This document shows positions 45,301 to 64,000 of a DNA stretch of 64,000 nt, one piece after another. The notes under the pieces were generated by a model. It was not told the DNA's origin. It did not search any database and saw only the letters and a program-made list of their open reading frames with translations. The DNA is from Salpingoeca rosetta (taxonomy: Eukaryota; Protista; Choanoflagellata), in NCBI GenBank assembly GCA_033442325.1, contig JAWQFM010000024.1, positions 757,716-821,715 on the forward strand, read 5' to 3'. Within the stretch, counting starts at the first letter, position 1. Every line of letters begins with the position of its first letter. The position numbers were made by a program, and so were the translations under genes.

Positions 45301-48300
45301 CACGTCCGTGGGCGCGGGGATGGTCACGTCCACGAACGCGCTCGACTCAACAAGGTCAACCGAGTCTGTCTCCGGATCGGCGTTTGGTGACTCGCACAGC
45401 ACCGTCCACGTGGCGCTCAGCAAATTGCCAGAGCCGGAGCCCTGTGCCAGCACGTGCCTGTTGTCAAAGACGAGGTCGCCCGTGGACGGCACAGCAATCA
45501 CGCCGCGGTTCGCCTGGTCCACGGAGAGGCGAAGGCCAGTCTCCGGGCCAACGACCATGCGCGAGCCGTCCTGGAAGCGCGCAAACGCGGCCACGCTGCC
45601 CACCTCCTGCTCCTGGTCCAGCGCCTGCGAGATGGAGACGACCGAGGCCGACGCCAGGCCCGTGAAGGGGCTGTACAGCGGCTTGACCGTCATGTCCGTG
45701 AACACGATGAGCTCCAGCTCGTCCACCAGCAGGCTGGCAACGGTGCTGCCGCCGAGGCTCGGCACGGGCACGCTGCCCACGGCCTCCACTGTGGTGTTGC
45801 CAATGGTGCGCTCTGGCACAGCCGGGTTGATGACGGCAACGACTGCGCTTCCGAGGCGGAAGCCCCGCGCCACGTTGCCCTGCATCTGGATGGCGGTGGA
45901 CTGCGCCGCACCCGTGGCGTCGAGCGCCTGCAGCACGCCGCTCACGTCCTTGGTCACGCGCACGCGCACGGCGCCGGCGCCGCTCTCCATGCGGCTGAAC
46001 ATGGCAAAGGCGTGGATGCGGGTGTCCTGGAACTTGTCGCGGCACGTGGACGCGTCCTCGTCAAACCACTGCCACCCGGCCACGCGCGCCAGCATCGGGT
46101 TGTCCGCCTGCAGCTCAATCGGCAGCTGCGGCGCCCACACCTCACCAAGGCAGTCGCCGTTGGCGGTGGTGTTGCTCACGGCGTCGCGCACAGACACGGC
46201 GATGCTGGCGCCGGTCATGCCAGACGTCTCGTCGCCAGCGAGGACCACGCTTGAGCAGTCACTGCTCACGTCCCACACGTGCGGGTGGCGGGAGCTGCAG
46301 GACAGGCCTGGCGTTCCCGTGGTGCCGGTGACAAGCTGCATGTCGCCGGCAGCGTCGCTGGTCACGATGCGCAGCGGGAACGTCTGCTCCCCGCCGTTGA
46401 CGATGCAGGTCGTTTCGACAAATATGCAGCACTGGAGAATTCGCAGACAAATCAGGTATACCTGACTGATACATCGGTAAGTCGACTGGCCGCCTCATCG
46501 GAACCCCCAAGAGTGCTCCTTTTTCTACAAGCTGTTAAGACTCATAATCCTACTGTGTGTATCTGGATGTGATAATGGTCTTCCCGAGGTCAATTGTAAC
46601 TGATCCTCGTTCGGAGTCCCGCCGTGCCAGCAAGTTTTCACCATGTACGTATCGAGCGTACGAAGTGGGTTCGCGAACCGCCGTCCGACATATCGTAGTA
46701 ACGGACGCTTTCTAAAACCAACCTATATCCGGAATTCGCCTGATATGTATGACCTAGGCGACGCTACTGGAAGCAAGTATCACATAGTGTTGCGTTCTGG
46801 TTTCGAATCTCACACTCGTTCCTCATCGTGGGAGAGTACACAGCGGAGACTTATACAGAACTCCTTCGGACACTAACGGACATGGCCTAATTGGCGCGCA
46901 GCACCTTGCCCTTGAAGGCGGGGTGCGTGGGCAGCTCCACGAGGATGTTGCGGTTCAGCGTCCAGGGCTGCTCCTGCACAAGCGACACAGAGGGCAGCAG
47001 CGTGAGCGGGGCGCGCTCGTCCTCAAAGCCCGCCTGCACGGTCAGGGTGCGGCCGACACCGGCCACCGTGAACCATGCCGCGGGCACGGCGACGTTCACC
47101 GTGCACACGCCCAGGCGCGAAAACTGGTTGGTGCTGGAGCCCGCGGTGCAGGCCTGCTCCACGGCAACCGTGCTTGGGTCTGCGACGCCGAGGTCCGAGG
47201 CCAGGCCCGCGTCTGGAGTGATGCGCACCTTGACCGCCGTCAGCAGCGACGGCGGCGAGAAGTGCTCCGTGCGCACCTGCGCAGACACGCGCACGTACGC
47301 GTCGTCATGGTACACCTTGCTGGTGAGCAGCTCCACCCGCACCTGGTCAATGGCGCTCGGCACAGACGTGAACGCGCGCGAGACGGTGCCGGAGGCGAGG
47401 GCGGCCTCAAACGTGCCGCCCAGCCCCGTGTAGGTGGACGTGTAGTCGAGAATGTCAAACGTGTAGATGAGGTGGAACGTCACGTCCGCGTCCGTCGCCA
47501 GGCCGTTCAAGTCCATGGCCGTGACGCGGAACGTGACCGTCTCGCCCTGCTCGCGCACGATGACCGCGCTCACGGCAATCTCGCCCGTCTCCTCGTCAAT
47601 GTAGTACTCGCCGCCGCCGGCGTCTGGCGTCTTGAAGGAGTAGCGGACCACGGAGAAGTTGCCCGTGTCGCGGTCCGTGGCGTTGAGCTGCAGCACGACC
47701 GTGTCCTGCAGCGTGCCAATGCGCACGTTGGCCTCGTAGTGTGCCAGGTTGGACGTGTTGGCGGGGTAAAACGTGGCGTCGCCCTGCAGCGCCGGCCCAA
47801 ACATGGGGTGGTTGTCGTTGACATCCTCCACAATGACGGACACGGTGGCGGTGGTGGTGTGGAAGGGGAACGTCTGGTCCTGCGCCTGCACCGTCAGCAC
47901 AAACTGCGCCCGCGCCTCGCGGTCGAGCGGCAGCGTGTGCGTGATCTCGCCCGACACGGGGTCAATCTCAAACGTGACGGGGTCGTCGGTGCGGTCAACA
48001 ATGCTGTAGCGCACCTCCGCGGAGAGCCCAATGTCATCGTCCGTGGCCTGCACCGTGCCCACGGTCGACAGCGCCGGGGAGCTCTCCAGAAGCGAGAACG
48101 TGTACGTGGACAGGGTGAACACGGGTGAGAACGAGTTGGTGCACTCGCTCGTGGCAACGTCGTTGTCCAGGGTGGTGAGTGGGCTGTAGCCCGGCACGTT
48201 AACCTCCAGCGTCTGGCTGTCCCGCACGGGAAGGTTGAAGTTGATGGTGTCCGGGTACAGGAGCGGGGTCACAGACTCGGGCGGCCCGACGATAAACTCG

Positions 48301-49072
48301 ATGCGCGTGGGGTCTGTGCGCAGGTTGGAGTTGAGGGTGACCACCACCACTGAGACACCAATGGAGCCCACGTTGTCCGTGGTCATGTCTGTCTGGATGG
48401 CGGCCGCATACACACCGGCAGACGGGTTGACGCGCTCCGCGCGGATGAGCCCGCCAAACACGCCGTTCGACTGGCCCGTGTGGTCGATGCCAGCCACCTT
48501 GGTGCCCAGGCACTGCGGGCAGTCGTCCACCGACGAGGCAAACAGGCTGGTCATGGCGGACTGCTTGGAGGCGAGGTCAAAGAAGACGTACGTCTGCTGC
48601 TGGGCGTCGGGCGCGGTGTCACCCACGTCACCCTTCTGCAGCACCGTAGCCTCCAGGTACACGACACACCCGGCATCGCTCGTTACGTTGATGGGCTTGA
48701 CGGTGAGGTCGTTGAGGAAGCGCGACAGCTGCACGGAGGCCTTGGCCAAGTAGAAGGCATCGATGCTGTCAATGAGGCCGTTGCGGTCCGCATCCATGTT
48801 GTTCAGCTGCCGCAACGAGGGCGGCGAGGCAAGGAAGGCCGGGCCATACGTACCCGTGAACCCAACCAGGTCCTCCACAACGTACTGCAGCGTGTACGCC
48901 ACATCAACAATGTCAAACACGCAGTCGCCGTTGGCGTCGCCCGTCTCTGCGTCGCTGCCGCACGTGTCTGCACGGCGGCCACGCGACAGCACGCGCTGGC
49001 TCTTCTGCTGCTTGCCTGCCGACGTGTAGCGGACAAACGAGGGTGGCACGTTCACTGTTGCAACAACGTCTT

Positions 49073-49105
<33 letters not shown>

Positions 49106-52100
49106 GACGGCGGCGCCGGGCCGCGCTCAGCTGCACGTTGACCAGGCCAGCCACAAAGTCGCGGTCGGGCGTGCCAATCGGCGTTTGCCCAGACACAATG
49201 TCCGCCTCCACAAGCTGCTCCACAACGCCGCGAATCTGGGTGAGCCCGGTGCCGATGACGTTGAACTTGATGGTGGCGACGTGGTAGGCAGCGCCCTGTT
49301 GCGTGGCGTCGCTTGGGGAGCCGGACACGACGTACTCGCCTGGCGGGTCGTTGGTCTGCGCCACGAGCGGGCCGCCGCCCCAGTTGGCGCCCTCCGTCAG
49401 GCCGTTGTCCACGGCCTCCAGCTTGGCGTCGTCGTAGAACATGCGCAGCGTGAAGGCACCAAACGGCGTGTTGGCCACGTTCATGGCCACGCGCACGGTG
49501 ATGGTGTCGCCCACACTGGCGGGCTTGACGGGGATGCCGCTGCTGTCGCCCAGGTCAATGTCGGCAAAGGCCGGCTGCAAGTTGCACGCGAAGGACCTCG
49601 TCGCAGTGACGGAGGTGCCAACTGCGCTCGCCGTCAGCACCACGTTCTCGTGGTAGTTTCCGCGCAGGGTGACGGTGCCGCGCGCAGCGTCCACGGTTGC
49701 GGGCTGCGTCGTGCTGAGGGAGAAGGAGATGAGGCCCGGCAGCGTCGGGTCGCCGTTGTTGGCAAACAGCGTCAAGTACTCCGTGCCGTCGCTCAGCACG
49801 CACGCAAGCTTGGCCTGCGACGTCTGCTGGTCAATCACGCCCGTGAGCGTGGAGACGAAGGAGAAGCTCTTCAGCTGCGTCACCTGCACGGGGTTCTGGT
49901 CGTCCACGGTGATCTGCAGCGAGGACGCCTCCACGCCGGCAAACGCACCAATCAGGTCCACCGTGCCTTCGTTCAGGGCCTCCATCAGCTTGATGGTGCC
50001 AGAGTCGCCAATGGCCACCACGTTGTTGTTGGGCGTGGTCGTGCCCGCGCTGTACGTGACGTAGCTCGTCTCCGGGTGGGTGTTCACAGACAGGGTCGTG
50101 CCGTCGGAGATGCTCAGGGTCATGGCAAGCACGGCGCTCTGGCGCACGGACGTTGGGCCGATGCGGCTCAGCGTCGTCTCAGACACGGAGGCTGACCCAG
50201 AGTACGTGGGGTAGGGCGAGGAGAACACGCTCACGCCAGCCAGCTTGACAACCTTGACGTTGACGCCGTTGCCCGGGAGGCTGCGCAGGAGCGTTTCGTT
50301 GAGGTTGGTGAAGGTGACAAAGAGGCGGCCCGTGCCCACGTCCCCGTTGGAGTTGGGCACGATGCGCTGGGCATCGCCGTTGCGCTCCACGGTGAACAGG
50401 CCGTTGCTGTCCTCCAAGCGGTACTCGATGCGGTCGTCGAGGGTCATCTCCTTCTTGCGGTTGCCATCGTACAGCAGGAACACGCGCACGGTGCTGAACG
50501 TCTTGATGGAGCTCTCGCGGGCCAGCGGGTCCGCCGACGACACGATCCGGCTCTCCGAGGACGTGATCTCCACGCCAATCGGGTCAGCCAGCGTGACCTC
50601 GAGGTCCACGTTGCGCGTGGCGATGGTCTGTCCGCACGCCTGCCACGCCGCCGTCACGCGCACGCTGTCAGAGTCCGTGCCGGCCACCACCTGGTCCGGC
50701 ATGATGGACGCCACCGCAGCGTTGGAGGACGTGAGCATGAGCCCGTTGGCCGAGGACACGGCAACACGCGTGCCGTCGTCCATGACGGCGGACGCAATCA
50801 CGTGGCCGATGCGGCCCTCCACGTCAAGCTTGAGCGAGTACTGCGCAAGCGCGGCGGGGGAGCTGGACCGGGCGTACGTGGTCGTGGACTGTGGCTCCTC
50901 AAGCGTGAGCTCAGAGGCCACCACGACGTTCAGGTCAATCACGCCCACGGGGTCCGTGGTCACGTCGACGGCGGTCGTGCCCACGGTGCGGCCATCGCTC
51001 GTCACAACAGACACCTGCGCGCTGCCCACGCTCTGGCCCGTGATGGTGGGCGGGGACGCCGTCTTGCTCAGCGCCACGTTACCGTTGCTCACGGCCAGGC
51101 GCGACTTGACGGTCTCCGTCACATCCACCGTCACCACGGCCGAGCCAGAGCCCAGGGAGAAGTCCGCGTGGGCAGCAATGTCCGCCGACTGGAAGATGGC
51201 GGCGCAGGCGTTGGCCTCGTCGCGGTACTCGGAGAACTGGCCCAGGCTGGCATCGCTCGTGGTGAGGGCAAGCGGCGTGGCCGGGTGCCACACCTTGAAG
51301 GGCACGCGCGTGGAGGCGCTGCCAATGGTGACAACCACGTCCGCGCTGGTGGCCCCGCTCGTCTCCGTGCCGTCCAGGCGCATGGAGCAGCCCGAGGTCT
51401 GCAGCACAGCCGCGTTGGCGCTGCTGCAGCTGGCGCTCGCAGACGAGCACGAGTCGCTGCAGGCCGCGGTGGCCGACGAGCGCGGGCAGGCGTAGCACGC
51501 GAGCGTGGTGATGCCAACCGTCTGCGCGCTGCCCGTGAGCCGCGCCGTGTTGACCACCTGGCTCTGAGCTGCGTAGGCAATCACGCCGCGCACGCCGTTG
51601 GCGGCAATGTACACCTGGCCGGTGCGGCCCGTGCCCGAGCGGGAGATGAAGGTGCCGGCAACAGAGCCCGTCTGGCCGCGCACCTTGACACGCGACACGC
51701 GCGTGCTGCCAAGGCCCTCCACCACCATGCTCATGGAGGCAAAGGCGTCCGTGGTAGCGCCAGACTGCACAATGTAGTCGATGGTAATGAGCTGCTGGCG
51801 ACCCACCTCGCCCTGCTGAATCTTGTCCGGCACGGCGTTGGCGGCAATGACCGTGGTCGAGCCAGACTCGGTGACAATGGAGTTCCACAGCGACGAGTCA
51901 ATGTTGATGCGCTCCAGGGCAATGTTGCTGTCTGTGGTGAAGGAGAGCGTGAACGTCGTCACGTAGTATGTCACGTCCGTGGACACGGTGGCGCGGAAGC
52001 GCTGGCCAGGGTACACGGGCCGGCCAGGCAGCTCCTGCACAACGTCGTCCACGTACAGCGAATCCGACACGCTGATGCGCGGGCGCAGCAGCACCGATGC

Positions 52101-55100
52101 CAGGTCAGTCATGGTGCTGCCGGCGATGCCATAGCGCACGGTGACGCGGTGGTCCTCGCCCGGAACGAAGTACGCCGCGGGCAGGTCCGCGGTCGTCAGC
52201 GAGCACACGCCCGTGTTGACGTTGGTGGTGCACTGCTTGGAGATGCTCGAGCTCTGGATGTCAAGCAGCGCCTGGTCCGGCACCAGCTCCACGCGCACGG
52301 TGGTGGCGGAGAGGCGGGAGGAGAAGTCCTCATCCCGCACTTGCAAGGCCACGCGGACGGATGCGTCGTCGTACCACACCTCGTCGTCATCGTTCAGCAG
52401 CACCGCCCGCACCGTCGTCGCGTCCTTGCGCGCGTCGCGGAAGTTGCCAGAGGCGCTCAGGGCACCAAACTGCGTGGTGACGGTGCCTGTGCTCAGCACG
52501 TTGGCGTCCACCAGGAGGCCAAACTGCTGCTGCACGTCGCCATTGGCGTTGCGCGCCGTGTTGCCGATGAGGAAGCCGCGCCCAGAGATGGAGAAGGTGG
52601 GCAGCAGCTCGTCCACCACCAGCACACGCAGCGTCATGGTGCCCTGCCTGGCCTGCGGCCGGCCTTGGTCGTCCGCCTCAATGGTGAGGGTGAACGCGGT
52701 GGGCAGGTCCGAGGACACGTCGCGGCCCGTGCGCACCTCGCCACTCAGCCGATCGATGGTGAACGTGTTGCCGACGTTGCCGTCCAGGATGCTGTAGGCG
52801 ATGCCGCTCGTCTCACCGCACGCCGCATCGCCGTCCGTGGCCATGACCGTGGCCACCAGCACGCCGGCCTTTGCGCCAGAGGAGATGGACGTGCTCACCT
52901 GCGTCTGGTTGAACGCCGGTGCGGCCGTGTTCTCCTCCACCACGCGCACGTTGACAAAGCCCTGCGTCTGCATCACGGGGATGCCGCCGTCGCGGGCCAT
53001 GACGCTCAGCTGCACCGCGGCGTCCGTGAAGCCGCACAGCGAGCGGGTGAGCGTGAGCACGCCCGTTGCCGGGTCCAGGCTGACGTAGCCCGGGTGGCTG
53101 GTGGACACCAGCGAGAACCGCAGGAGCGCGTTAGGACCAGAGTCTGCGTCCGTGGCGTTGATCTGAAAGATCGGCGTTCCCACGGCCGCGGCGCGCCCAA
53201 GGGTGGCGACAAACGGCGACTGCCCAAACACGGGCGCGTTGTCGTTGGCGTCAAGCACGTTCACGGTGATGGTGCCGCTGCCCGTGCGAGCAGGGACACC
53301 GTGGTCGCGCATGCTCACGCCAAAGGAGTACGTGGTTTGCGACTCGTAGTCGACCTGGGTCTTCAGGTACAGGCCACCGTCCTTCCGCAGCTCAAAGGGG
53401 AAGTTCGCCAGGGCAACGGGGTCGGTCTCCGTGAGGAAGTAGCTGATCACGCTGGCATTACCCGCGTCAGCATCAACCGCCTGCAGCGTGGTGATGAGCG
53501 TGCCGTTGGCTGCGCTCTCACTCAAGGAGGTGGTGGCGGTGCCGCTGGGGAACGCGGGTGTGTTGTCGTTGACGTCGTCGATGCGAATCGTCACCTCCAC
53601 GGAGCCAACGTTGGGTGGCATGCCGTTGTCCGTGGCCTGCACCAGCAGCTGGTACGTGGCAAACGTCTCACGGTCAAGCGCGGACGCAACGGTGATGGCG
53701 CCCGTGCTGGCGTTGATGGCAAAGTCGCCGCGCGAGCCGAGCGCAATACTGTACATCACAGTCGTGGCAACCGTGTCCCGCTCCGTGGCCACCAGCTGCA
53801 GCGCCAGGTCGCCCACGCTCGCGTCCTCAGACACGTGCACCTCGTAGCTCGTCTGGTTGAACACGGGCGCGTTGTCGTTGACGTCGGCAACAAAGATGAT
53901 GGCGGTGATGTAAGTGGTGTGCACGGGCGTGCCGCTGTCGGAGGCAGACACGTTGAGCGAGAACTGGCTCCTCGTCTCAAAGTCCAGCGACTTTCGCAGC
54001 CACAGCGCGCCCGTGTCCGCGTCCAGCTCGAAGGTGTCGTCAACGTTGCCGGACACGATGGCGTACGTCACGCGCGAGGCCGGCGAGTTGTCCGCATCCG
54101 TTGCCGTGATGTTGAGGATGACGGTGTCGTTGAAGGCGTCGCCTTCCGGCAGGCGGCGGCTGTAGAAATCGGGCACGGAGAACACGGGCGAGTGGTCGTT
54201 GACATCCAGCACCTCCACAATCACCGTTGTTTCGTCCTGGAAGTCGATGTTGCCGGCATCGTGCACGCGAACCGTGACGTTGTACGTAATCTGGCCCATC
54301 TCGCGGTCGAGCGTGATCAGGGACACCAGGCGACCGTCGGGCTCCACCGTAAAGGAGCCAGGCACCTCCTCCGACAGGAGCGTGAACACGCTGATGTTGT
54401 TCGGGTAACTGTCCAGGTCTGTGGCGGGGAGCAAAATGGTGGTGTTGCCACCGTCCACTTGCTCGGGCACGCGGAAACGAAGCGGGTGTGACGGGAAGCG
54501 CGGTGGCTCGTCGTTGACGTCCGTCACCCGCACCGTGACGGCCGTGGTGTCGTTGAAGGAGGCCACAACCGGGTCGCGGGCCAGGACCACGACGTGGTAC
54601 GTGGTACGCTGCTCGCGGTCGAGCACGGGCGCGTTGCCAGACGCGTTGGCGTTGAAGGACAGCATGCCCGTCGCCGCGTCGATGGAGAAGAAGTTTTGCT
54701 CGTTGCCGGCGACAATCGAGTACACAATCTGCGCGTTGCTGCCCGTGTCCGCGTCCACCGCCTGCACCTGCACCAGGTCAACGTCGGCCACCTCATCCTC
54801 GGCGACGTGGGCAACAAAGGCCTGCTCAAACACGGGCGGGTTGTCGTTGACGTCGGTGACGGTGATGCGCACGCTGCCCGAGCGTGTGAGCGGCGGGGTG
54901 CCGCCATCGGAGGCCAGAATCTGCAGGTCGCGCGTGGTTGCTGCCTCGTAGTCAAGCATCTTGCTGAGCGTCAGCTCGCCCGTGGCGCGGTCCAGGGAGA
55001 AGGCGGCGTCGTCGTTGCCAGACACAATGCTGTAGCGCACCTGTCCGCCGGCGCCGAGATCCGGATCGCGCGCCAACACGGTGAGCAGCGACGAGCCCGC

Positions 55101-58100
55101 GGCCGTGGACTCAGGGATGGATGCGGTGAACTGCGTCTTGGAGAAGGTGGGCACGTTGTCGTTTATGTCCAGAATGTCAATGAGGATGTTGATCGTGTCC
55201 GTGAGCGGGTTCTCCACAACGTCGTCCGTCACCCTGACGCTGAGCACGTACAGGGCGGCCGTCTCGCGGTCCACCGACCCGTTGATGCTGATCACGCCCG
55301 TGCTGGGGTCAATGGCAAACGCGTCCGCCACGTTGCCGCTGACGATGCTGTAGGTGAGGGCGGCCGTGTCCCCGCAATCCGCGTCAGTGGCAGCGACCGT
55401 GGTCACCACATGGCCGTCTGCCGCGCCTTCGGACACGTTGAGCTGCAGCGTGGCCACGGGGAACTGCGGCGCGTGGTTGTTGACGTTGAGCACGGTCAGG
55501 GTCACGGTCACCGAGGTGGACTGGCCACCGGTGCCAAACGCGCCCTCAGAGGCCACCACCGTCAGCGTGTACACAGACTGGTCGGCGGCACACAGCGCCT
55601 GCGTGCTGGTGATGGCGCCCGTGACGGTGTCGATGGCCCAGCGGCCCAGCGCGTTGCCCGTGGTGATGGTGTAGCGGACGGGGCGCGCTTGCGTGCGATC
55701 GCCGTCCACGGCCTCCACCGTCAGCACGGTCGTGCCCGCGGCAATGGTCTCCTGCACGTCTGCGCTGTACGAGGCCTGGGAGAACACGGGCGGGGAGTCG
55801 TTGGCGTCGGCGATCACTACCACGAGCGGCGCCGTGCTCACGCGGCGCACGGGCGTCTGCTCGTCCGAGGCCTGGATGCGAAGCACAAAGCTGCTGCGCT
55901 CCTCGCGGTCCAGCGAGCGCAGCAGCCGCACCACACCGGTGCTGTTGTCGATGGTGAAGTGCGGGTCCGTGGCGTTGTCGCCGCTGATGATGGAAAAGGC
56001 GATGGCCTCCGTGTCGCCGCAGTCCTCGTCCGTGGCGCTCACCTGCGCCACAAACTCGCCGGGGCCGGCAAGCTCCGAGACGACAATCGGGTAGGAATCC
56101 ACGCTCAGCACGGGGTCGTGCAGATTCTCGTTGGACACGTTGATGGTCACCGTGGCCGTGGCCGTGTCGACAGAGTCTGTCGCCTGCACCGTGAGCACAT
56201 GCTGGGGGTTCCGCTGCGCGCACAGCGGCGCCTGGTTCACCAGCTCGCCGCTCACGGGGTCCAGGCGGAACGTGTCGTCGACGTTGCCGGCGATGATGCT
56301 GTAGCTCACGGTATCGGTGCCCTCGGGGTCGGTCGCCGTCAGGCGCACGATGGGCGAGTCAATGACATTGGCCTCCCCCAGCGTCACCATGTACGAGCTC
56401 GGGTTGAACACGGGCGGCTCGTCGGGAACGTTGCCCACCTTGATCACCAGCGTCAGGCGGCCCACGCGAGAGGGCACGCCGTCGTCGCGCGCGTCAATGG
56501 CCACCGTGTACTGCGTGCGCGTCTCGTAGTCCAGGGCGCGCAGCAGCGTGACAATGCCCGTGCTCGCGTCAATGCCAAACTCCTGGTTGGCAGACAGGTC
56601 AGAGTCGAGCGTGTTGATCGAGTACCGCAGGCCAAGCGCGTCGCCGCAGTCGGCGTCCGTCGCCGTCGCCTGCAGCACAAACGTGCCCATGGCCGTGTTC
56701 TCGGGCACTGTCACGGTGAGCGTGGCGGGCGAGAACGTTGGCGCGTTGTCGTTGACGTTGGAGATGGTCACGTCCAGGACAGCGTAGCCAACCAGGCCAT
56801 CAAAGCGCGAGTCGCGAATCTCCAGCACCAGCGAGTACGCCGGCGCCGTGCGCGCGCACTGCGCCACCAGCAGCGTCACCGCGCCCGTGCTCGCGCCCAG
56901 GTCAAACACGTTGGCGTCGTTGCCAGAGGCAATCGTGTACGTGTACGTGGTCCCGGCGGTCGCCGATGCCACCGTCGTGAGCACGCTGCCTGTGGCGGTT
57001 GTCTCCGGCACGCTCACCGTGTATTTGTTCTGGGAGAACTGGGGCGTGTTTGGCGCGGGCGCCTGCTTGGTGATCTGCACCTCAACGAGCGTGGAGCGGC
57101 CGCCGGCGTCCGTGGCCACGGCGTCCAGCACGTACGGCGTGTCCTGCGTCAGCGGTGCGACCACGGTGATCACGCCCGTCGTTGGGTGGATGGTGAAGGC
57201 AAACTGCGTGTTGCGGTTCAGCGTGTACGTGATGCTGTCGTCGCAGTCGGCGTCCGTGGCCCTGACGCGGCCGGCGTACGCGTTGAGGGAGCTGTCTGCG
57301 GTGAAGCTGTAGCTGGCCTGCTCAAACACCGGCGACGCCGCATTGGACGCGGAGAAGCTCAGCTGGACAACCGTGCCCGCGCTGCGTGCCTCCGGCTGGC
57401 CGTCGTCCGTCGCCGTCACCACCAGTGTGTACGAGCTCTGCGTGCGCGAGCACACGGGAGCGGCCAGCGTCAGGCTGCCCGTCACAGCGTCAATGGCAAA
57501 CACGTTGCCCGTGTTGCCGGAGGTGATGGCATAGGCAATGTTGTCGCCGTCCGCGTCGGTCGCCCCGACCAGCACGAGCTCCGTGCCAGTCGACACAGAG
57601 TCGGCAAACGTGCCGCTGTACGTGGCAGCAAACACGGGCGCGTACTGGTTCACGTTGAGGACGGTGACGAGCACGGTGGCGGTGGAGGTGCGCGGGGACG
57701 AGGCAAAGTCATCCGTGGCGGCTACGGTGAGCGTGTGTTGCGCAGCGCCACCGCTGCTCACGTCTGCGTTGAGCGGCTGCACAACAGCGAGCTCGCCCGT
57801 CTCGCGGTTGATGGCAAACAGGCCGTTGCTGTTGCCGCCGGTGATGCGGTATGTGACCGCGTCCCGGCAGTCGGCGTCGGTTGCCTGCAGCTGCAGCAGC
57901 ACGCTGCCCACGCTGCCCGTCTCCGAGACGTTGACGCTGTACTGGGCCTGGGAGAAGGCGGGCGCGGCCGTGTTGGCCGGCACCACGCTCACGTCCACCA
58001 GCGTGTACGACTGCAGGTCGGGCCGCGTCTTCGACTGCGCCTGCACCTGCAAGCTGTACGCGTCCTCCGACGCAGCGCACACGCGCGACATGAGCGTGAT

Positions 58101-61100
58101 GGCGCCGCTGTTGGCGTCCACGGCAAACTTGCCGGCCGAGTTGCCGCCCGTGATGCTGAAGGAGGCAATGCCGGTGCGGTTGGTGGCGACCGTCGCCACC
58201 GTCGTGCCGATGCTGGCCGACTCGGCCAGGTCCGCCGTGTAGCGCGAGCTGGTGAACAGCGGGAAGTCGGGCGACGTCTCCACCACGTTGATGAGCACAT
58301 ACATGGTGTCGGAGAGATCGCCATCAGAGGCAGACAGCTGCAGCGAGAAGGAGGAGCGCTCGGCAAAGTCCAGCTCGCGCACGAGCGTGATCACGCCGCC
58401 AACCGTGTCGAGGTCAAACGTGGGCGGCGTCGTGTCCCCGCTCACCACGCGGTAGCGGATCTCCGCCTCGTCTGCGCAGTCCTGGTCCGTTGCCTCCACG
58501 CGCGTGACGTAGTCGCCCAGGGAGGCTGTCTCCAGCAGCGTCACCCGCACCAGGTCCTGCGTGAACACGGGAGCAAACGCGTTGCCCGCCGTCACGGTGA
58601 TGGTGAACTGCGTGTCGGTCGACTGCGGCGGCGTCCCCGTGTCCGTGGCGCGCACAATGAGGTTGTACGTGCTCTTGTCGGCTGCGCAGAGCGGCCCAAG
58701 CGCGCGCACAATCACTCCAGTGGTGGGATCGACGCGGAAGGCGGAGCCCGCATCGCCACCGACAATGTTGAAGAGCACCAGGTCGCCGTCGCCGTCCGTC
58801 GCCTTGACCGTGCCAATCGCTGAGCCCGCAGACGCGGTGTCCGTCACGCTGGCAGACATCTGCGTGTGCGTGAACACGGGCTTGTGGTCGTTCACGTTGC
58901 CGACGGCGATGGTGATGGTGGTGGTGGCCGTGTTGGGCACGGGCGTGGCGCTGTCCGAAGCCTGCACGCGAAGCTCGTAGGTGTCCTGCACCTCGTAGTC
59001 GAGCGGCTCAACCAGCGTCACGATGCCCGTAGTAGCGTTCACGGAAAACGCGCTCATGTGCACGCTGGTGTTGCCGTTGACGCTCAGCAGCGCGTACGAC
59101 ACGCTGTCAAAGCAGTCGCCGTCCGTGGCGTACGCCGTGGCCACCGCGGTCGGCGCCTGCACAGACTCGAGCACGCTCACGGTGGCATCCGGCACGCTGA
59201 AGACGGGCGCGTTGGCGTTGCCGGGCAGGATGGTGACGTTGGCCGTGGCCGTGGCCGTGCGGGTGCCGTCGCCCGCCTCAATCTGCAGCAGGTACGTCAC
59301 GCCGGGGCTGTTGCGGTCGGCCAGGCACAGGCGGTGGCGCGGGAAGACGTTGCCCGTCGTCACTTCAATGGCAAACGGGAAGGCGGCCGTGGCCAGGGAG
59401 ATGGGCCCGGTCGCAGACACAATGCGATGCACCACAGGCAGGGCAAGCGCGTCTGCATCCGTGGCCTGCACCCGTAGCACGGGGGCGCCAACCGCCACAC
59501 CGTCGTGTACCACGGCGCTGTACTCCGTGTTGGCAAACACGGGCGCCTCATCGTCGACGTCCGTCACGGTGATGGTGAGCAAGGACACGTCGGTCTTGCC
59601 ACCCGCATCCGCCACCTGCACGCCCATGACAAACTGGCGCGGCTGGCCGTTGGCCTGCTCGTAGTCGAGCGCCCGTGCCAGCGTGAGCACGCCGCTTGCG
59701 CTGTCCAGCACAAAGGTGGCCGGCGTCGTGTCGCCGGAGATGACGCTGTAGGTGAGGGCGTAGTCGTCCCCGCAGTCCGCGTCCGTGGCGGCCAGCGTGG
59801 TGATGACCGTGCCGGTGGCCGTGTTCTCGGGAACAGACACGCTCGCCGTGCTCACCGCAAACGATGGGGACGCGGCATTCGCGTTGGTGACCGTCACATC
59901 AAACACGGCCACGCCAGCAGCGCTTGCGGGAAAGGCCGTGTCTGCCACGCTGAGCACGAGGCGGCGCAACGGCTCTGTGTCGGCGCACAGGAGGCCGGCC
60001 TGGTTCACGCGAAGCTCGCCAGAGCTGGCGCCCAGCGAGAACGCGCCGTCATCGTTGCCGGCAGTGATGGAGAAGGTGTGCGTGGCAGAGACGGTGCCGG
60101 CAGAAACGAGGCCGACGAGGGTGCCCGCAGCCGCGTTCTCCGCCACGTTGGCCGTGTACATGGGCTGCGAGAACGCCGGCGCGTTGGGGTCCGCGGCGAC
60201 GACGCGCACGCGCACGTTGGCCTGATCCGTGTTGGATGCGCCATCCTGCGCCTGCACGGTCAGAATCTCCTCGTCGCCCTGCTGCAGGGAGCTGGAGGCC
60301 ACGACAATGAGACCCGCAGACGTCACCGACACGCGGGAGCTGGGACCGCCCACCTGCGAGTAGGTGAGTGTCGTGTCCTCGCAGTCCGCGTCCGTGGCGC
60401 TGAGCACCAGCACCACAGAGTTGAGGGCGGCGTCAGCAGCCACGTTGGCCTCATACAGTACAGTGGAGAACGCGGGCGCAAACGTGTTGCCCGCGGTGAG
60501 GGTGACGGTGAGCACGGCGTCCGTGTACAGGGACGTGGGTTCACCGTCATCGGTCGCGCGCACAACGAGGGTGTACGTGTCAAGCAGGCTCGCGCACAGG
60601 GGCGCGGCCACGGTGATGGCGCCCGTGCTCGCGTCAATGGCAAAGGCATTGTCTGCGTTGCCAGAGACGAAGCTGAAGGCAACGGCGTCGCCATCCGCGT
60701 CCGTGGCGCTGGCCGTGGTCACGGCCGTGCCTGTGGAGGCGTCTTCGGAGAGGGTGACGGAGGCCTGGCCCAGGGACAGCACGGGTGCGTTGTCGTTGGT
60801 GTTGTTGACGGTGATGGTGAGGGTGAGCTCGTCAAACTCGGGCGGGTGCGTGCTGTCGCCCTCGTCTGTGGCGCGCACGGTGAGCGTGTACGAGCTGGCG
60901 TCAGCGTAGTGGATGGCAGAGGCCACAAATACCTCGCCAGTGTTGGCGCCCACGCCAAACACGGCCACGCTTGGGTCGCCGGTGAGCAGGTGCCCCGTGC
61001 CCTCGAGCGTGTACGTGAGGCGGTCACCGCAGTCCACGTCCACGGCCTGCACGGTGGTCACGCGCGTGCCCACGGTGGCACCCTCCACCACGGAGGCCGT

Positions 61101-64000
61101 GGCGCTGGTGCTGGGGAACGCGGGCGCGTGCGCGTCGCCCAGGAGCACGTCGATGAGGACGGGCACGGAGGCCTTGCGCGCCGGGGAGCCGTTGTCGCTG
61201 GCCTCGACCAGCAGCGTGTACGACGACTGGTCGTTGAGGCACAGGTTGCGCTGGCGGCTAATCTCGCCCGTGGTGGTGTTGATGGCAAACACGCCAGCGT
61301 CGTCGCCGTCCACAATCGAGTACGTGATGTGGCACGTGTCGCACGCGTCGCTGTCTGTGGCCTCCACCTGCAGGAACGGCATGCCCTGCGCCAGGGTCTC
61401 CACCACGCTCACGCTGTACAGCGGGAGGCTGAATGCCGGGTCAAACTCGTTCACGTCGAGGATGGTCACCTTGACCACGACCGAGTCAAAGGCCGGGTCG
61501 GGCGTGGCGTCGTCCTGCACGCGCACGACAACGTCAAACGAGGTGTGCTCTTCGCGGTTGGTGGGGCCCGTGGTGAGCAGCTGGCCGTTGGAGTTGATGC
61601 GGAACCAGCGCGACGTGCCCGTGCCGCCCACGATGCTGTACAGCACAGAGTCGCCGCAGTCCGGGTCGACCGCGGAGATGGTGGTCACCAGCGTGTCGCT
61701 GGGCAGGCCCTCCTGCAGCGCGGCCGAGGGCAGCTCGTTGGCAATGACGGGGGGCCGGTTGTCGACAATGCGCACAATCACGTTGACCTGCGCAGAGGAG
61801 ATGCGGCCGCCGCCGTCCGTGGCGCGCACGGTGAGGTCGTAGGAGGAGCTGGCAGAGCCGCACAGGGCGCCCGTGTTGGAGATGGCGCCCGTGGTGCTGT
61901 TGATGGAGAAGAGGCCGTCAATCGTGTCCGCGAGCGTGTAGGTGACGGTGCCAAACGCGCCGGCATCCGGGTCCGTGGCCTTGGCGGTGTACACGGTGGT
62001 CGGGTACGACACCTCGTCAATGGCCTGCGTCACGGGCGACTGCGCAAAGGAGGGCGAGTTGTCGTTCTCATCATCAATGATGATGACAACCGTGGCCAGG
62101 CCAACAAAGGAGCCGGACGTCACGGTTGCGGTGACCTCAATCTGCGGCGTCGCCTCGCGGTCCACGTTCCCCGTCGACACAAGCACGCCCGTCGCCGTCT
62201 GCATCATAAAGGGCAGGTTGGACCCCTGCAGGCCGTACATGAGCGTCTGCCCCTGCTGCAGGCAGTCCACGTTGTGCGCGACGAGCGCGGGGCTCAGCTC
62301 CACGCCAGAGCCCTGGTTCTCGCGGAAGTGGAACACGTAGCTGTCCTTCTCAAACGCGGGCGGGGAGTCGGTCACGTCCTCCACCAGCACGGTGACCGTG
62401 GTCGTGGTCTCCATGGGCGGCGTGCCCGAGTCGCGCGCCGTGACGTACAGCAGAATCGACTCCACAAACCCGGTGCCGTTGACGTTGGGCTTGCACGTGG
62501 AGTTGCCGCGCAGCTGCTCAAAGTCCACGCGCTGCTTCAGCCACAGGCCGCCCGTGGCGGAGTCGAGCTCAAACACGCCGTTGGGGTCGCCCGAGGCGAT
62601 GCTGTAGTTGACCTGCGCGTTGGCGCCCTGGTCCGGGTCCAGGGCCACAATGGACAGGAACGTGCGCTCCACGGGCTTGCTCTCGGCGATGGTGACCGTG
62701 TAGTTGGTGCGGTCGAACATGGGCGCGTTGTCGTTCTCGTCCAGCACGTTCACGGTGACGGTGGCGTCGGCGTGGTTGGCGGGGTCCGACGCGCGAATCG
62801 TCAGCACGTACTGCGCGCGCAGCTCACGATCAAAGGACGTGTTCTGGTACACGGCGCCCGTGAGCTCGTCCACGTAGAAGAACTGCCGCATCTCCACGGG
62901 CAGGAGGGAGTAGCGGATCTGGGCGTTGAGGCCCGCGTCCGCATCCGAGGCGTTGGCGAGCAGCAGGAACTTGGGCCACGGCCCGTTCTCGCGCACGGCG
63001 ACGCTCGTCTGCGTGAAGCCAAAGGTGGGCAGGTTGTCGTTGATGTCGCGCAGGATGAGGGAGATGGTGACGTTTGGCCCCGTCTGTGGCGGGACACCGC
63101 TGTCATGCACGCCAATCACCAGCGTGCGGCCGTGCCCCATCGCCTCGCGGTCAAAGACGGCCTTTGTCACGATGGAGCCCGAGTCGCCCATCTCAAACAG
63201 GTCCTCCTCGTTGCCCGTGAGGATGGTGAAGGCCGGGCGCGCGTTGGCGCCGAGATCCACGTCTGTCACGGCCAGGCGGTACACCAGCGTGCCCACCGGC
63301 TGCTCCTCGTCAAAGTACACCGTGACGTTGGTCGTGTCTGGGATGGGCGGGTTGTCGTTGATGTCGGTGATGGTGATCTGCACGCGCGCCTCCGAGGAGA
63401 GCGGGGGCGTGCCCAGGTCCGTGGCGCGCACAACAAACTCAATCTCCGGCAGGCCGTTCGGGAGCAGGGCCTCCCGGTCCAGGTCGGCAGCCACCTTGAT
63501 GGCGCCCGTGTACTCCTCCACGGTGAACCGCGTCTCGTTGACAATGGCGTAGCGCATCTCGTACTCGGCAGAGGGCGGGCGGTCCGGGTCCGTGCTGGAC
63601 ACGTTGAGCACGGTGAAGCCGATGCTGCTGTGCTCGGGCATGGACCCTCGGAAGAGCGGCCGCGAAAACACGGGCGGCTCCACGTTGGCGTTGTCCACGA
63701 TGACGGTGACGGTTGCTGGCAGCACGGCGCGGCCGGGCGGGTCGCCGCCGTCCTGGGCGTTGATGTTCAGCGTCAGCACGCGGCGCTCGTCGTACGAGAC
63801 CACCTTGGACGTGCGCAGGAGCTGCCCCGTGGTGCGCCCCACGGTGAAGAAGCCCTCGTCCGTGGCGCCGGAGATGCTGTAGGTGACGTTGCCCAGCGCG
63901 CCAGAGTCCTGGTCTGTGGCAAACACGGACGCCACGAGCGTGCCTGCAGGCACGTTCTCCAGCATGTTGACGGTGATGTCCGTGTCGTTGAACACGGGCA
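39374..64000 (-). CDS. Giant coherin-type cadherin (EC repeats + TMEM132-like + cohesin + dockerin + Kunitz + TM + acidic tail); 5' end beyond the window; interrupted at 46411-46890 and by the N-gap 43204-43686
   Basis: Three ORF pieces (46887-63995, ~43687-46410, 39374-43174). Dozens of PE/LDRE/DxNDNxP/ATDxD cadherin motifs, two cohesin-like domains, two dockerin-like GDANGD..D pairs, a 6-Cys Kunitz (FYGCQGNANNF) and a TM helix ILIAGFTAAALLVFIVLLLLLL. Confidence 0.92.
42281..42445 (-). other. Kunitz/BPTI domain within the cadherin
   Basis: CLLPRASGSTNCNLGAPVTRYRYDRSTATCVAFDFYGCQGNANNFETKHECETTC: six Cys in Kunitz spacing, with the GCxGNxNNF signature. Confidence 0.9.
42770..44195 (-). other. 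Cohesin-like domain, polybasic/poly-Ser linker and dockerin-like domain (copy 2)
   Basis: ARDDEFEVPVIIN..LGAIDLEIRYSTAFLE..ELARITFR; TRRRRRSSSSS..RRERARR; GDANGDCEFDIRD and DADLNDEINLAD. Confidence 0.75.
43204..43686. other. Assembly gap (483 N), probably spurious
   Basis: The 29 nt left of the gap (43175-43203) are identical to the first 29 nt right of it (43687-43715). Confidence 0.85.
46411..46890. other. ~480-bp block of foreign composition interrupting the cadherin CDS
   Basis: Hand count gives ~49% GC, against visibly much GC-richer flanks. It is TA-rich, lacks the host codon periodicity and microsatellites, and introduces an in-frame TAG at 46887-46889. Boundaries are accurate to a few nt. 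Confidence 0.85.
48740..49563 (-). other. Cohesin-like domain, polybasic/poly-Ser linker and dockerin-like domain (copy 1)
   Basis: ASVGDTITVRVAMN..FGAFTLRMFYDDAKLE..VATIKFNV (cohesin-like); ARRRRRSSSSSSSSS..RGRR; GDANGDCVFDIVD and DADRNGLIDSID (paired F-hand motifs). Confidence 0.75.
52600..64000 (-). repeat. Array of roughly 35 extracellular cadherin (EC) repeats
   Basis: About 3800 aa with ~105-110 aa periodicity of DxNDN/NxxAP, ATDxD, Y.I..GN and TG.I motifs; the count is estimated from length. Confidence 0.9.

What the first reader, a model, noticed from the sequence alone, without database searches (positions are those of the whole stretch)
52810..61870. Alternate cadherin junctions swap Ca2+ ligands for a Cys pair: predicted inter-repeat disulfide staples
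Seen 12 times: in one EC repeat the LDRE/LDYE motif is replaced by a Cys motif (ALCGS, NLCLN, PLCAS, LLCAD, RLCLA, PLCAA, RVCAA, PVCSR, AQCAR, PLCAQ, ALCAA, SLCGF). The following DxNDN linker is usually degenerate (GNTF, NANA, GNAN, GNAF, ANTA, SNAA, ENTA). The next repeat has Cys right after its DxD (DPDCG, DVDCG, DADCE, DADCG, DGDCF, DQDCA, DADCR, DADCD, DADCG, DEDCG, DADCG, DGDAACG). Eleven of these recur with two-repeat periodicity, and many intervening junctions stay canonical (LDYE..DVDDE, LDRE..DANDS). Known: LDRE of EC(n), the linker and DxD of EC(n+1) converge on the same inter-domain Ca2+ site. Inference: the co-varying cysteines form a disulfide that locks EC pairs into rigid, Ca2+-independent and possibly redox-sensitive di-domains. 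I know of no description of this design.
Basis: partly seen in the sequence, partly recalled or inferred. Interest (0 to 1): 0.8.

Follow-up and report, generated by a model that had tools for sequence, protein, structure and literature searches.

The report
Cysteine-stapled cadherin repeat junctions
A giant, transcribed cadherin of a choanoflagellate-type organism has replaced two of the three calcium sites at every second repeat junction with a strictly co-occurring cysteine pair, most likely a disulfide between neighbouring repeats, a linker type I found in no paper.

Summary
The minus-strand ORF (46887 to the window end, 5,703 aa) carries 36 tandem cadherin (EC) repeats. All 12 reported Cys junctions are present, and there is a 13th of different form at EC5-6. 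Those pairs plus one local CDTC account for all 28 cysteines of the array.

Across 3,656 junctions in 127 giant cadherins, Cys at the Asp67 position occurs 26 times. Each time a Cys lies 1-4 residues after the DxD of the next repeat (p = 2e-56). All cases are in TMEM132-module (coherin-like) choanoflagellate cadherins.

Direct-coupling analysis of 2,923 Cys-free junctions ranks residue 68 of EC(n) against residue 32 of EC(n+1) 5th of 11,236 pairs, so these loops touch.

The site-3 ligands (N102, DxD, XDX) are kept at the Cys junctions. The site-1/2 ligands are lost. These junctions are therefore probably one Ca2+ plus one disulfide, not Ca2+-independent.

AF2 models are confident and extended, but no coordinates are returned, so the SG-SG distance is untested.

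Arthropod Dachsous EC5-6 has an analogous C68-C32 pair. Six searches of the open paper library turned up no inter-repeat cadherin disulfide. Verdict: new variant of a known kind. The scan noted this same stretch once more (s1-440382), not on other DNA.

The parts
46887..63998 (-). One open exon of 5,703 codons of a giant cadherin gene. It is open at the window end, so the N-terminus lies outside the window.
   Evidence: ORF list and translation. Pfam Cadherin PF00028 is matched 32 times, with TMEM132 Ig domains after the array. RNA reads are continuous, come from the minus strand and show no splice joints over 55149-61100.
52599..63998 (-). Array of 36 tandem EC repeats (aa 1-3800).
   Evidence: Iterated profile search gives 36 contiguous domains. 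Alignment.
55149..62054 (-). EC7-EC28: 11 di-repeat units. In each, EC(odd) has Cys at position 67 and EC(even) has Cys right after DxD.
61656..61862 (-). Cys pair EC7-EC8 (C713 ALCGS, C781 DPDCG).
61029..61241 (-). Cys pair EC9-EC10 (C920 NLCLN, C990 DVDCG).
60381..60596 (-). Cys pair EC11-EC12 (C1135 PLCAS, C1206 DADCE), with linker AGNTF.
   Evidence: AF2 model of EC11-12: pLDDT 95.2, pTM 0.79.
59772..59987 (-). Cys pair EC13-EC14 (C1338, C1409).
59112..59327 (-). Cys pair EC15-EC16 (C1558, C1629).
58476..58688 (-). Cys pair EC17-EC18 (C1771, C1841).
57867..58079 (-). Cys pair EC19-EC20 (C1974, C2044).
57243..57452 (-). Cys pair EC21-EC22 (C2183, C2252).
56646..56858 (-). Cys pair EC23-EC24 (C2381, C2451). 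The linker is still NVNDN.
56019..56222 (-). Cys pair EC25-EC26 (C2593, C2660).
55374..55592 (-). Cys pair EC27-EC28 (C2803, C2875).
   Evidence: AF2 model of EC26-28: pLDDT 94.9, pTM 0.82.
52818..53036 (-). Cys pair EC35-EC36 (C3655 SLCGF, C3727 DGDAACG). This is the last junction before the TMEM132-like module.
   Evidence: It groups with the equivalent terminal pairs of P0028, P0087 and P0121 at SH-aLRT 89.
62262..62495 (-). Variant pair EC5-EC6: C502 in a 16-residue insert after VDFE, and C579 in NVDC.
61332..61343 (-). Local CDTC (C886, C889) in the DxD loop of EC9. These are the only cysteines of the array outside the junction pairs.
39374..43135 (-). Downstream exon-like ORF of the same gene. 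It holds a Kunitz domain, two more EC repeats, a transmembrane helix (ORF aa about 833-853) and an acidic tail.
   Evidence: Pfam and hydropathy scan. This makes the EC array extracellular.

Best explanation
At 12 junctions, plus one variant at EC5-6, the giant cadherin has a hybrid linker.

What the sequence shows. Asp67 of the D(R/Y)E motif in the E-F loop at the bottom of EC(n) is a Cys. Glu69 and linker Asp100 and Asp103, the ligands of Ca2+ sites 1 and 2, are lost. A second Cys follows the DxD motif in the B-C loop at the top of EC(n+1). The ligands of the high-affinity site 3 are all kept: linker Asn102, both Asp of DxD, and the XDX Asp of EC(n+1).

What I infer. The two thiols oxidise in the secretory pathway to an intramolecular disulfide between the repeats. 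That bond does the bridging work of Ca2+ sites 1 and 2, while one Ca2+ stays at site 3. The bond closes a loop of about 70 residues: strands F and G of EC(n), the linker, and strands A and B of EC(n+1). Each stapled pair should therefore be a stiff di-domain. Its junction cannot open when the low-affinity Ca2+ sites empty, and less chain can be pulled out under load.

In EC7-EC28 such di-domains alternate with ordinary, partial or Ca2+-free junctions.

Shown: the motifs, the covariation, the contact of the two loops in ordinary cadherins, the extracellular topology and transcription. Inferred: bond formation, Ca2+ at site 3 and the mechanical effect.
For: 1. Pairing arithmetic. All 28 Cys in 3,800 aa are 13 junction pairs, 67-77 residues apart, plus one CDTC. 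Each repeat holds only one Cys of a pair.

2. Covariation. The window's table is 12/0/1/22, p = 1.6e-8. In 127 giant cadherins with 3,656 junctions, Cys67 occurs 26 times, always with a Cys 1-4 residues after the next DxD (p = 2e-56). Without the window it is 14 of 14 (p = 1e-32). In the wider set of 255 proteins and 7,775 junctions, every partner-less case among the non-family proteins listed has its Cys at 68, never at 67.

3. Constraint. The di-repeat units are only 20-50% identical, with end branches of about 0.6 substitutions per site. Yet C67 is one of 5 invariant columns in its repeat class.

4. Contact. Mean-field direct-coupling analysis on 2,923 junctions without Cys67 ranks pair (68 of EC n, 32 of EC n+1) 5th of 11,236 inter-repeat pairs. 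It sits among known Ca2+-site pairs. Pairs (67,29), (67,31) and (69,31) rank 15, 17 and 22. Arg68-Glu32 is enriched 2.2-fold, and aromatic 68 pairs with a small residue or a gap. PMC9935876 describes the same two loops touching in protocadherins.

5. Independent case. Arthropod Dachsous EC5-6 has C68 and C32 together. Vertebrate Dachsous has Y68 and S32 there, while the intradomain C21-C61 pair is kept in both.

6. Ligand pattern. D29, D31 and D82 of EC(n+1) are kept 12/12. N102 is kept 10/12, with Asp in the other two. D67 is 0/12, Glu69 0/12 (an Asp once), D100 0/12 and D103 1/12. PCDH15 EC5-6 has the same motif pattern and binds one Ca2+ at site 3 (PMC7547225).

7. AF2 models. EC26-28 gives pLDDT 94.9 and pTM 0.82. 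EC11-12 gives pLDDT 95.2 and pTM 0.79. Both are extended like solved multi-EC fragments.

8. Topology and expression. A TM helix lies downstream. Minus-strand RNA covers the region.
Against: No bond was seen. The structure tool returns no coordinates, so the SG-SG distance in the models is unknown.

The strongest coupling is 68-32, whereas the window's Cys aligns to 67. The loop must therefore shift slightly, or the alignment is off by one residue.

The partner Cys sits at variable offsets (+1 to +4 after DxD). This needs loop plasticity.

Glu or Asp at the XEX position is kept in 11 of 12 Cys-type repeats, although its Ca2+ partners are gone. The disulfide model does not explain this.

The 11 internal pairs descend from repeat duplication. 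They are conserved copies, not 11 independent origins.
Confidence: 0.75

Rival explanations
1. The two cysteines, together with the retained acidic residues (the XEX Glu and the DxD Asp), form a soft-metal site such as Zn2+ in place of Ca2+ sites 1 and 2. They would not form a disulfide.
For: The first Cys sits exactly at a metal-ligand position (Asp67). The second is next to ligand Asp31. An acidic residue at XEX is kept in 11 of 12 Cys-type repeats without its usual Ca2+ partners.
Against: The array is extracellular. Paired cysteines of secreted proteins are normally oxidised (general knowledge). No conserved His or third thiol accompanies the pair. The partner's offset varies from +1 to +4, which suits a flexible bridge better than a fixed coordination shell. 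In Dachsous the pair sits beside an intact three-Ca2+ site.
Confidence: 0.08
2. The cysteines form disulfides between chains, for example Cys67 of one chain to Cys32 of a parallel partner. This would zip cis-dimers or ladders. Alternatively they stay as free thiols.
For: Nothing direct. Long cadherins such as PCDH15 do form parallel dimers (PMC7547225). Strict pairing in number would also suit a reciprocal cross-link.
Against: The two positions belong to loops that touch within one chain (PMC9935876). An intrachain bond would therefore form first during folding. The variant pairs at EC5-6 and the +2 to +4 offsets keep the same junction, not a common outer face.
Confidence: 0.1
3. The pattern is a by-product of amplifying one ancestral two-repeat unit that happened to carry two cysteines. 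There is no structural pairing.
For: The 11 internal pairs are paralogous copies with two-repeat periodicity.
Against: The copies have diverged to 20-50% identity, yet both Cys columns are kept: C67 12/12, and C32 11/12 with the twelfth shifted by two residues. The pair is also present in six other proteins, always together. An analogous pair is gained or lost as a unit in Dachsous.
Confidence: 0.03

Closest known systems
Protocadherin-15 EC5-6 linker (one Ca2+ at site 3; PMC7547225)
   Same: DRE is lost. DXNDN is degenerate but keeps its Asn (PPNNQ there, xxNxx here). The DXD and XDX of the next repeat are kept. The fold search also returns PCDH15 EC5-7 among the top matches.
   Different: PCDH15 EC5-6 has no cysteine pair and is seen in several orientations, so it is flexible. 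Here a Cys pair spans the junction, and the unit recurs 12 times.
Ca2+-free and partial linkers of long cadherins (PCDH15 EC9-10 and EC3-4; Fat, Dachsous, DN-cadherin EC2-3 from general knowledge)
   Same: Ca2+ ligands are lost at selected junctions of a long EC chain. The window also has three such plain junctions: EC12-13, 18-19 and 22-23.
   Different: Those linkers are read as hinges or bends. The Cys junctions are predicted to be the opposite, covalently fixed.
Cys-X5-Cys loop of protocadherin EC1 (PMC9935876)
   Same: The same two loops are involved: the strand 5-6 (E-F) loop of EC(n) against the strand 2-3 (B-C) loop of EC(n+1). That paper calls it a possible 'staple' of the Ca2+ linker.
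   Different: There the disulfide lies within one repeat and the contact between repeats is non-covalent. Here one Cys sits on each repeat.
Intra-repeat disulfides of PCDH15 and CDHR5 EC1 and PCDH24 EC2 (PMC8691648)
   Same: These are disulfides that stabilise cadherin repeats.
   Different: All lie within one repeat (strands A-F, or the F-G hairpin). None joins two repeats.
Coherin / TMEM132-module cadherins of choanoflagellates and sponges (Nichols 2012, as cited in PMC6030884)
   Same: The domain order matches: a long EC array followed by TMEM132-type Ig domains. Relatives carry cohesin and dockerin. The closest relatives include Salpingoeca urceolata and S. rosetta proteins.
   Different: The family was defined by its domain composition. 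No paper found here describes the Cys junction, and S. rosetta FAT3 has none.
Arthropod Dachsous EC5-6 (found here)
   Same: A Cys in the D(R/Y)E motif of EC5 and a Cys right after the DxD of EC6, conserved between Drosophila and Limulus.
   Different: The Cys is at 68, not 67. The junction keeps all Ca2+ motifs (IDCE, DVNDN, DPD). It occurs at a single junction, not in an alternating array.

Membership tests
Cadherin superfamily | Tandem EC repeats matching the Cadherin domain profile | tested here: met
   PF00028 matched 32 times, E = 0. The session's own profile finds 36 contiguous repeats. Models match solved EC fragments at Z 16-18.5.
Canonical three-Ca2+ cadherin linker | D(R/Y)(D/E) motif in EC(n) | tested here: not met
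   At the 12 Cys junctions, Asp67 is Cys in 12/12 and Glu69 is absent in 12/12 (an Asp once).
Canonical three-Ca2+ cadherin linker | DXNDN linker | tested here: not met
   D100 0/12 and D103 1/12. Only N102 is kept, 10/12 plus 2 Asp.
Canonical three-Ca2+ cadherin linker | DXD and XDX motifs of EC(n+1) | tested here: met
   D29, D31 and D82 are each 12/12.
Site-3-only partial linker (PCDH15 EC5-6 type) | Loss of DRE and of the acidic linker residues, with DXD, XDX and the linker Asn retained | tested here: met
   Ligand table compared with the motifs described in PMC7547225.
Site-3-only partial linker (PCDH15 EC5-6 type) | One bound Ca2+ ion at site 3 | not testable with these tools
   Needs a Ca2+ titration or a crystal structure.
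Inter-repeat disulfide staple (proposed class) | One Cys on each of two neighbouring repeats, always gained or lost together | tested here: met
   26 of 26 in 3,656 junctions. Dachsous shows gain or loss as a unit.
Inter-repeat disulfide staple (proposed class) | The two positions are in contact in the fold | tested here: met
   The direct-coupling pair 68-32 ranks 5th of 11,236, and Arg68-Glu32 is enriched 2.2-fold. This is contact of the neighbouring residue, not of 67 itself.
Inter-repeat disulfide staple (proposed class) | SG-SG distance of about 2 Å, or a linked peptide | not testable with these tools
   Structure prediction returns no coordinates, and /data holds no model file.
Inter-repeat disulfide staple (proposed class) | Oxidising (extracellular) location | tested here: met
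   A TM helix and cytoplasmic tail lie downstream of the array. The signal peptide lies outside the window.
Coherin / TMEM132-module cadherins | TMEM132-type Ig domains after the EC array | tested here: met
   PF16070 and PF23486 hits in both downstream parts.
Coherin / TMEM132-module cadherins | Cohesin (and dockerin) domains | tested here: inconclusive
   Pfam gave no cohesin or dockerin hit in the window protein at E <= 0.01. The closest relatives carry PF00963 and PF00404.

The most novel reading that the evidence does not exclude
A previously undescribed class of cadherin linker. A covalent disulfide between the E-F loop of EC(n) and the B-C loop of EC(n+1) replaces Ca2+ sites 1 and 2, while site 3 persists. 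In choanoflagellate coherin-type cadherins it is used in alternation to build chains of rigid di-domains. Arthropod Dachsous EC5-6 carries it at a single conserved junction. If so, premetazoan and metazoan cadherins can tune stiffness and Ca2+ dependence junction by junction with a covalent bond.
Probability: 0.65. Interest if true: 0.7.

Novelty: new variant of a known kind. Interest (0 to 1): 0.62.

Why it matters
Cadherin mechanics are thought to be set by how many Ca2+ ions each linker binds. Full sites give stiff rods, and missing sites give hinges. A junction that trades the two low-affinity Ca2+ sites for a covalent bond would be a third state: stiff regardless of the Ca2+ level at those sites, and able to limit unfolding under load.

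The window offers 12 natural copies next to ordinary and Ca2+-free junctions in one expressed protein. Two-repeat fragments can test the idea directly.

The same idea would give a concrete, mutable feature (C68/C32) in Drosophila Dachsous. It would also add a structural character to the history of cadherins before animals.

Tried and rejected
- SG-SG distance. Two AF2 jobs ran, but the tool returns only confidence values and secondary structure. No model file appears in /data. The distance could not be measured.
- Solved structures. The PDB sequence search and fold searches found only ordinary cadherin fragments. None could be checked column by column for the Cys pair. The homologue survey suggests none has it.
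- First alignment for the second fold (A2). I dropped those sequences, sent them to no other tool, and rebuilt the alignment (A3) from proteins accepted before.
- Tree of di-repeat units. It is mostly unresolved: 17 of 29 inner branches are open. It cannot say whether the alternating arrays of the window and of P0028 are inherited or parallel.
- Intra-repeat pairing. Rejected, because each repeat has only one Cys of a pair.
- Pairing of the Cys32 of an even repeat with the Cys67 of the following odd repeat. Rejected, because these lie at opposite ends of two repeats.
- Nichols 2012 (PMC3420208) is not held in the library.
- The large representative-protein search was not used. The claim does not rest on absence of relatives.
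Full report
THE GENE. The finding lies in one open reading frame on the minus strand, 46887 to the window end. It translates to 5,703 residues without a stop and continues beyond the window.
- Pfam finds the Cadherin domain 32 times in the first 3,800 residues, then TMEM132-type Ig domains and two more cadherin repeats.
- Two further ORFs downstream on the same strand carry a second TMEM132-like module, a Kunitz domain, two cadherin repeats, a transmembrane helix and an acidic tail. The repeat array is therefore extracellular.
- An assembly gap (N run, 43204-43686) interrupts the gene.
- RNA-seq raw reads of the same, coded, organism cover all 30 bins of 55149-61100. Their first mates lie almost only on the plus strand, as expected for a minus-strand RNA in most stranded libraries. 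They show no splice joints. The exon is transcribed as one piece.

THE OBSERVATION. A profile built from the protein's own repeats finds 36 contiguous EC repeats. Its numbering happens to coincide with E-cadherin numbering:
- XEX Glu at 14
- D(R/Y)E at 67-69
- DXNDN at 100-104
- DXD at 29-31
- XDX Asp at 82

In the alignment, Cys replaces Asp67 in EC7, 9, 11..., 27 and EC35. The next repeat has Cys at position 32, right after DxD, in every case. In EC36 it is two residues further on.

The array holds 28 cysteines in total: the 12 pairs, a 13th pair at EC5-6, and a local CDTC in EC9. In the EC5-6 pair, Cys502 sits in a 16-residue insert after VDFE and the partner is NVDC at 579. No Cys is left over, and each repeat holds one Cys of a pair. 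The junction table is 12/0/1/22, Fisher p = 1.6e-8.

Of ten, about four are near-canonical, three are partial, and three have lost nearly all ligands (EC12-13, 18-19, 22-23).

COVARIATION BEYOND THE WINDOW. A word search with EC11-17 returned 120 giant cadherins. A search with the TMEM132-like part returned six more. I cut them all into repeats with the same profile and read every junction.
- Among 3,656 junctions, Cys at position 67 occurs 26 times. All 26 have a Cys one to four residues after the DxD of the next repeat (p = 2e-56). Without the window it is 14 of 14 (p = 1e-32).
- The carriers are the window protein and P0028, P0087, P0090, P0092, P0101 and P0121. All have TMEM132, cohesin or dockerin domains. 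P0087 is from the choanoflagellate Salpingoeca urceolata.
- The S. rosetta relative (FAT3, P0123) has no such junction.
- P0028 is about 30% identical, and it also alternates Cys and ordinary junctions over eight repeats.
- In several relatives the Cys junction is the last one before a TMEM132-like module, as EC35-36 is here. These terminal pairs group together in a tree at SH-aLRT 89.
- The di-repeat units are 20-50% identical, with end branches of about 0.6 substitutions per site. Yet Cys67 is one of only five invariant columns of its repeat class.

The 11 internal pairs are thus conserved paralogues, not 11 independent origins. The conservation itself shows constraint on both cysteines.

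ARE THE TWO POSITIONS CLOSE? The structure tool gave confident models:
- EC26-28: pLDDT 94.9, pTM 0.82.
- EC11-12: pLDDT 95.2, pTM 0.79.

Both are extended like solved cadherin fragments. The best Foldseek match is CELSR1 EC4-7 with TM 0.78. VIA-align gives Z 16-18.5 over both repeats, rmsd 3.7-5.5 Å over the top rows.

As a substitute I ran mean-field direct-coupling analysis on 2,923 junctions without Cys67 (effective number 2,098). The strongest couplings between repeats are the known Ca2+-site pairs: 102-82, 100-35 and 102-29. The 5th of 11,236 is residue 68 of EC(n) with residue 32 of EC(n+1). Pairs 67-29, 67-31 and 69-31 rank 15, 17 and 22. The 68-32 coupling looks like a contact: Arg68 with Glu32 is enriched 2.2-fold, and aromatic 68 goes with a small residue or a gap.

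A structural paper describes the same two loops touching in protocadherins, where a Cys-X5-Cys loop of EC1 may 'staple' the linker non-covalently (PMC9935876). So the second Cys sits on a residue that touches the neighbour of the first.

A METAZOAN PARALLEL. One sporadic hit proved to be Dachsous. In Drosophila (obscura group and D. busckii) and in Limulus, EC5 reads IDCE and EC6 reads DPDCG, with an intact DVNDN linker. Vertebrate Dachsous 1 and 2 have Tyr or His at 68 and Ser or Arg at 32 at the same junction. An intradomain pair of EC6 (positions 21 and 61) is kept in both groups. The 68-32 cysteines therefore come and go together in orthologues. This is an independent case of the same logic at exactly the coupled pair.

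A Pecten Fat4-like protein has LCVNC ... TANHN ... DADCVSPGPC. In the wider survey of 255 proteins and 7,775 junctions, every partner-less case among the non-family proteins listed has its Cys at 68. Examples are the four-Cys insert of insect Fat and LDCE of vertebrate Fat1/3. None is at 67.

CALCIUM. At the 12 Cys junctions the ligands split cleanly:
- Kept: both Asp of DxD and the XDX Asp of EC(n+1), each 12/12, and linker Asn102 in 10/12 with Asp in the other two.
- Lost: Asp67 0/12, Glu69 0/12 (an Asp once), Asp100 0/12, Asp103 1/12.

This matches what is described for PCDH15 EC5-6: DRE lost, linker PPNNQ, DXD and XDX kept. That junction binds a single Ca2+ at site 3 and is flexible. In CDH23 EC1-2, site 3 is the highest-affinity site (5 µM, against 44 and 71 µM) (PMC7547225).

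I therefore read the Cys junctions as one Ca2+ plus one disulfide, not as Ca2+-independent. The acidic residue kept at the XEX position in 11 of 12 repeats is not explained by this reading. It is the main argument for the minor rival of a thiolate-carboxylate metal site.

MECHANISM AND RIVALS. The best reading (0.75) is an intrachain disulfide. It closes a loop of about 70 residues around the linker and takes over the bridging role of Ca2+ sites 1 and 2. The result is stiff di-domains strung between ordinary, partial and Ca2+-free junctions. The rivals are:
- a soft-metal site (0.08);
- interchain bonds or free thiols (0.10);
- a passive relic of duplication (0.03).

Bond formation, Ca2+ occupancy, and any mechanical or redox role are inferences.

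NOVELTY. Six searches of the open paper library, three of them aimed at inter-repeat disulfides and three at related questions, found only intra-repeat cadherin disulfides and Ca2+-free or partial linkers. None describes a disulfide joining two repeats. The library lacks most subscription journals, so this is not proof.

The gene family, TMEM132-module or coherin-type cadherins of choanoflagellates, is known (PMC6030884). The junction is a new variant of a known kind.

HOUSEKEEPING. I removed them and sent them nowhere else. The scan holds a second note on this same stretch (s1-440382) and none on other DNA.

Noticed in passing
window 61332-61343 (-), aa 886-889: A CDTC (CxxC) sits in the DxD loop of EC9 (DSDACDTC). 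These are the only cysteines of the EC array that are not part of a junction pair. It is probably a small local disulfide loop.
   Followed up: partly
window 62262-62495 (-), EC5-EC6: A 13th Cys pair of a different form. Cys502 lies in a 16-residue insert after an intact VDFE. NVDC is in EC6, and the linker is DVTDS.
   Followed up: partly
P0078:501-712, P0140:2213-2424, P0209:466-679: Arthropod Dachsous EC5-6 has IDCE ... DVNDN ... DPDCG, conserved from Drosophila to Limulus. Vertebrate Dachsous has a non-Cys pair at 68/32 there (mostly Tyr/Ser). The intradomain C21-C61 pair of EC6 is shared by both groups.
   Followed up: partly
P0023:3774-3986 (Pecten maximus Fat4-like): A junction with LCVNC in EC(n), the degenerate linker TANHN, and DADCVSPGPC in EC(n+1). 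That is two Cys on each side, possibly a double staple.
   Followed up: no
window EC12-13, EC18-19, EC22-23 (aa about 1240-1300, 1880-1940, 2290-2340): Three junctions between stapled di-domains have lost nearly all Ca2+ ligands and have no Cys pair. They are candidate hinges.
   Followed up: partly
homologue set, profile positions 105 of EC(n) and 88 of EC(n+1): This is the second-strongest inter-repeat coupling in the direct-coupling analysis, and Cys co-occurs there 9 times. It may be another linker-to-FG-loop disulfide in other giant cadherins.
   Followed up: no
window 56365: All RNA reads and one contig read G where the window has A. On the coding strand this changes GTC to GCC, Val2545 to Ala. 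It is probably a strain or allele difference.
   Followed up: partly
window 43204-43686: An assembly gap (run of N) lies inside the same cadherin gene, between the second TMEM132-like module and the Kunitz/EC/TM exon.
   Followed up: no
P0028:1662-2514: A relative only about 30% identical also alternates Cys-stapled and ordinary junctions over eight repeats. The tree could not tell shared ancestry from parallel expansion.
   Followed up: partly
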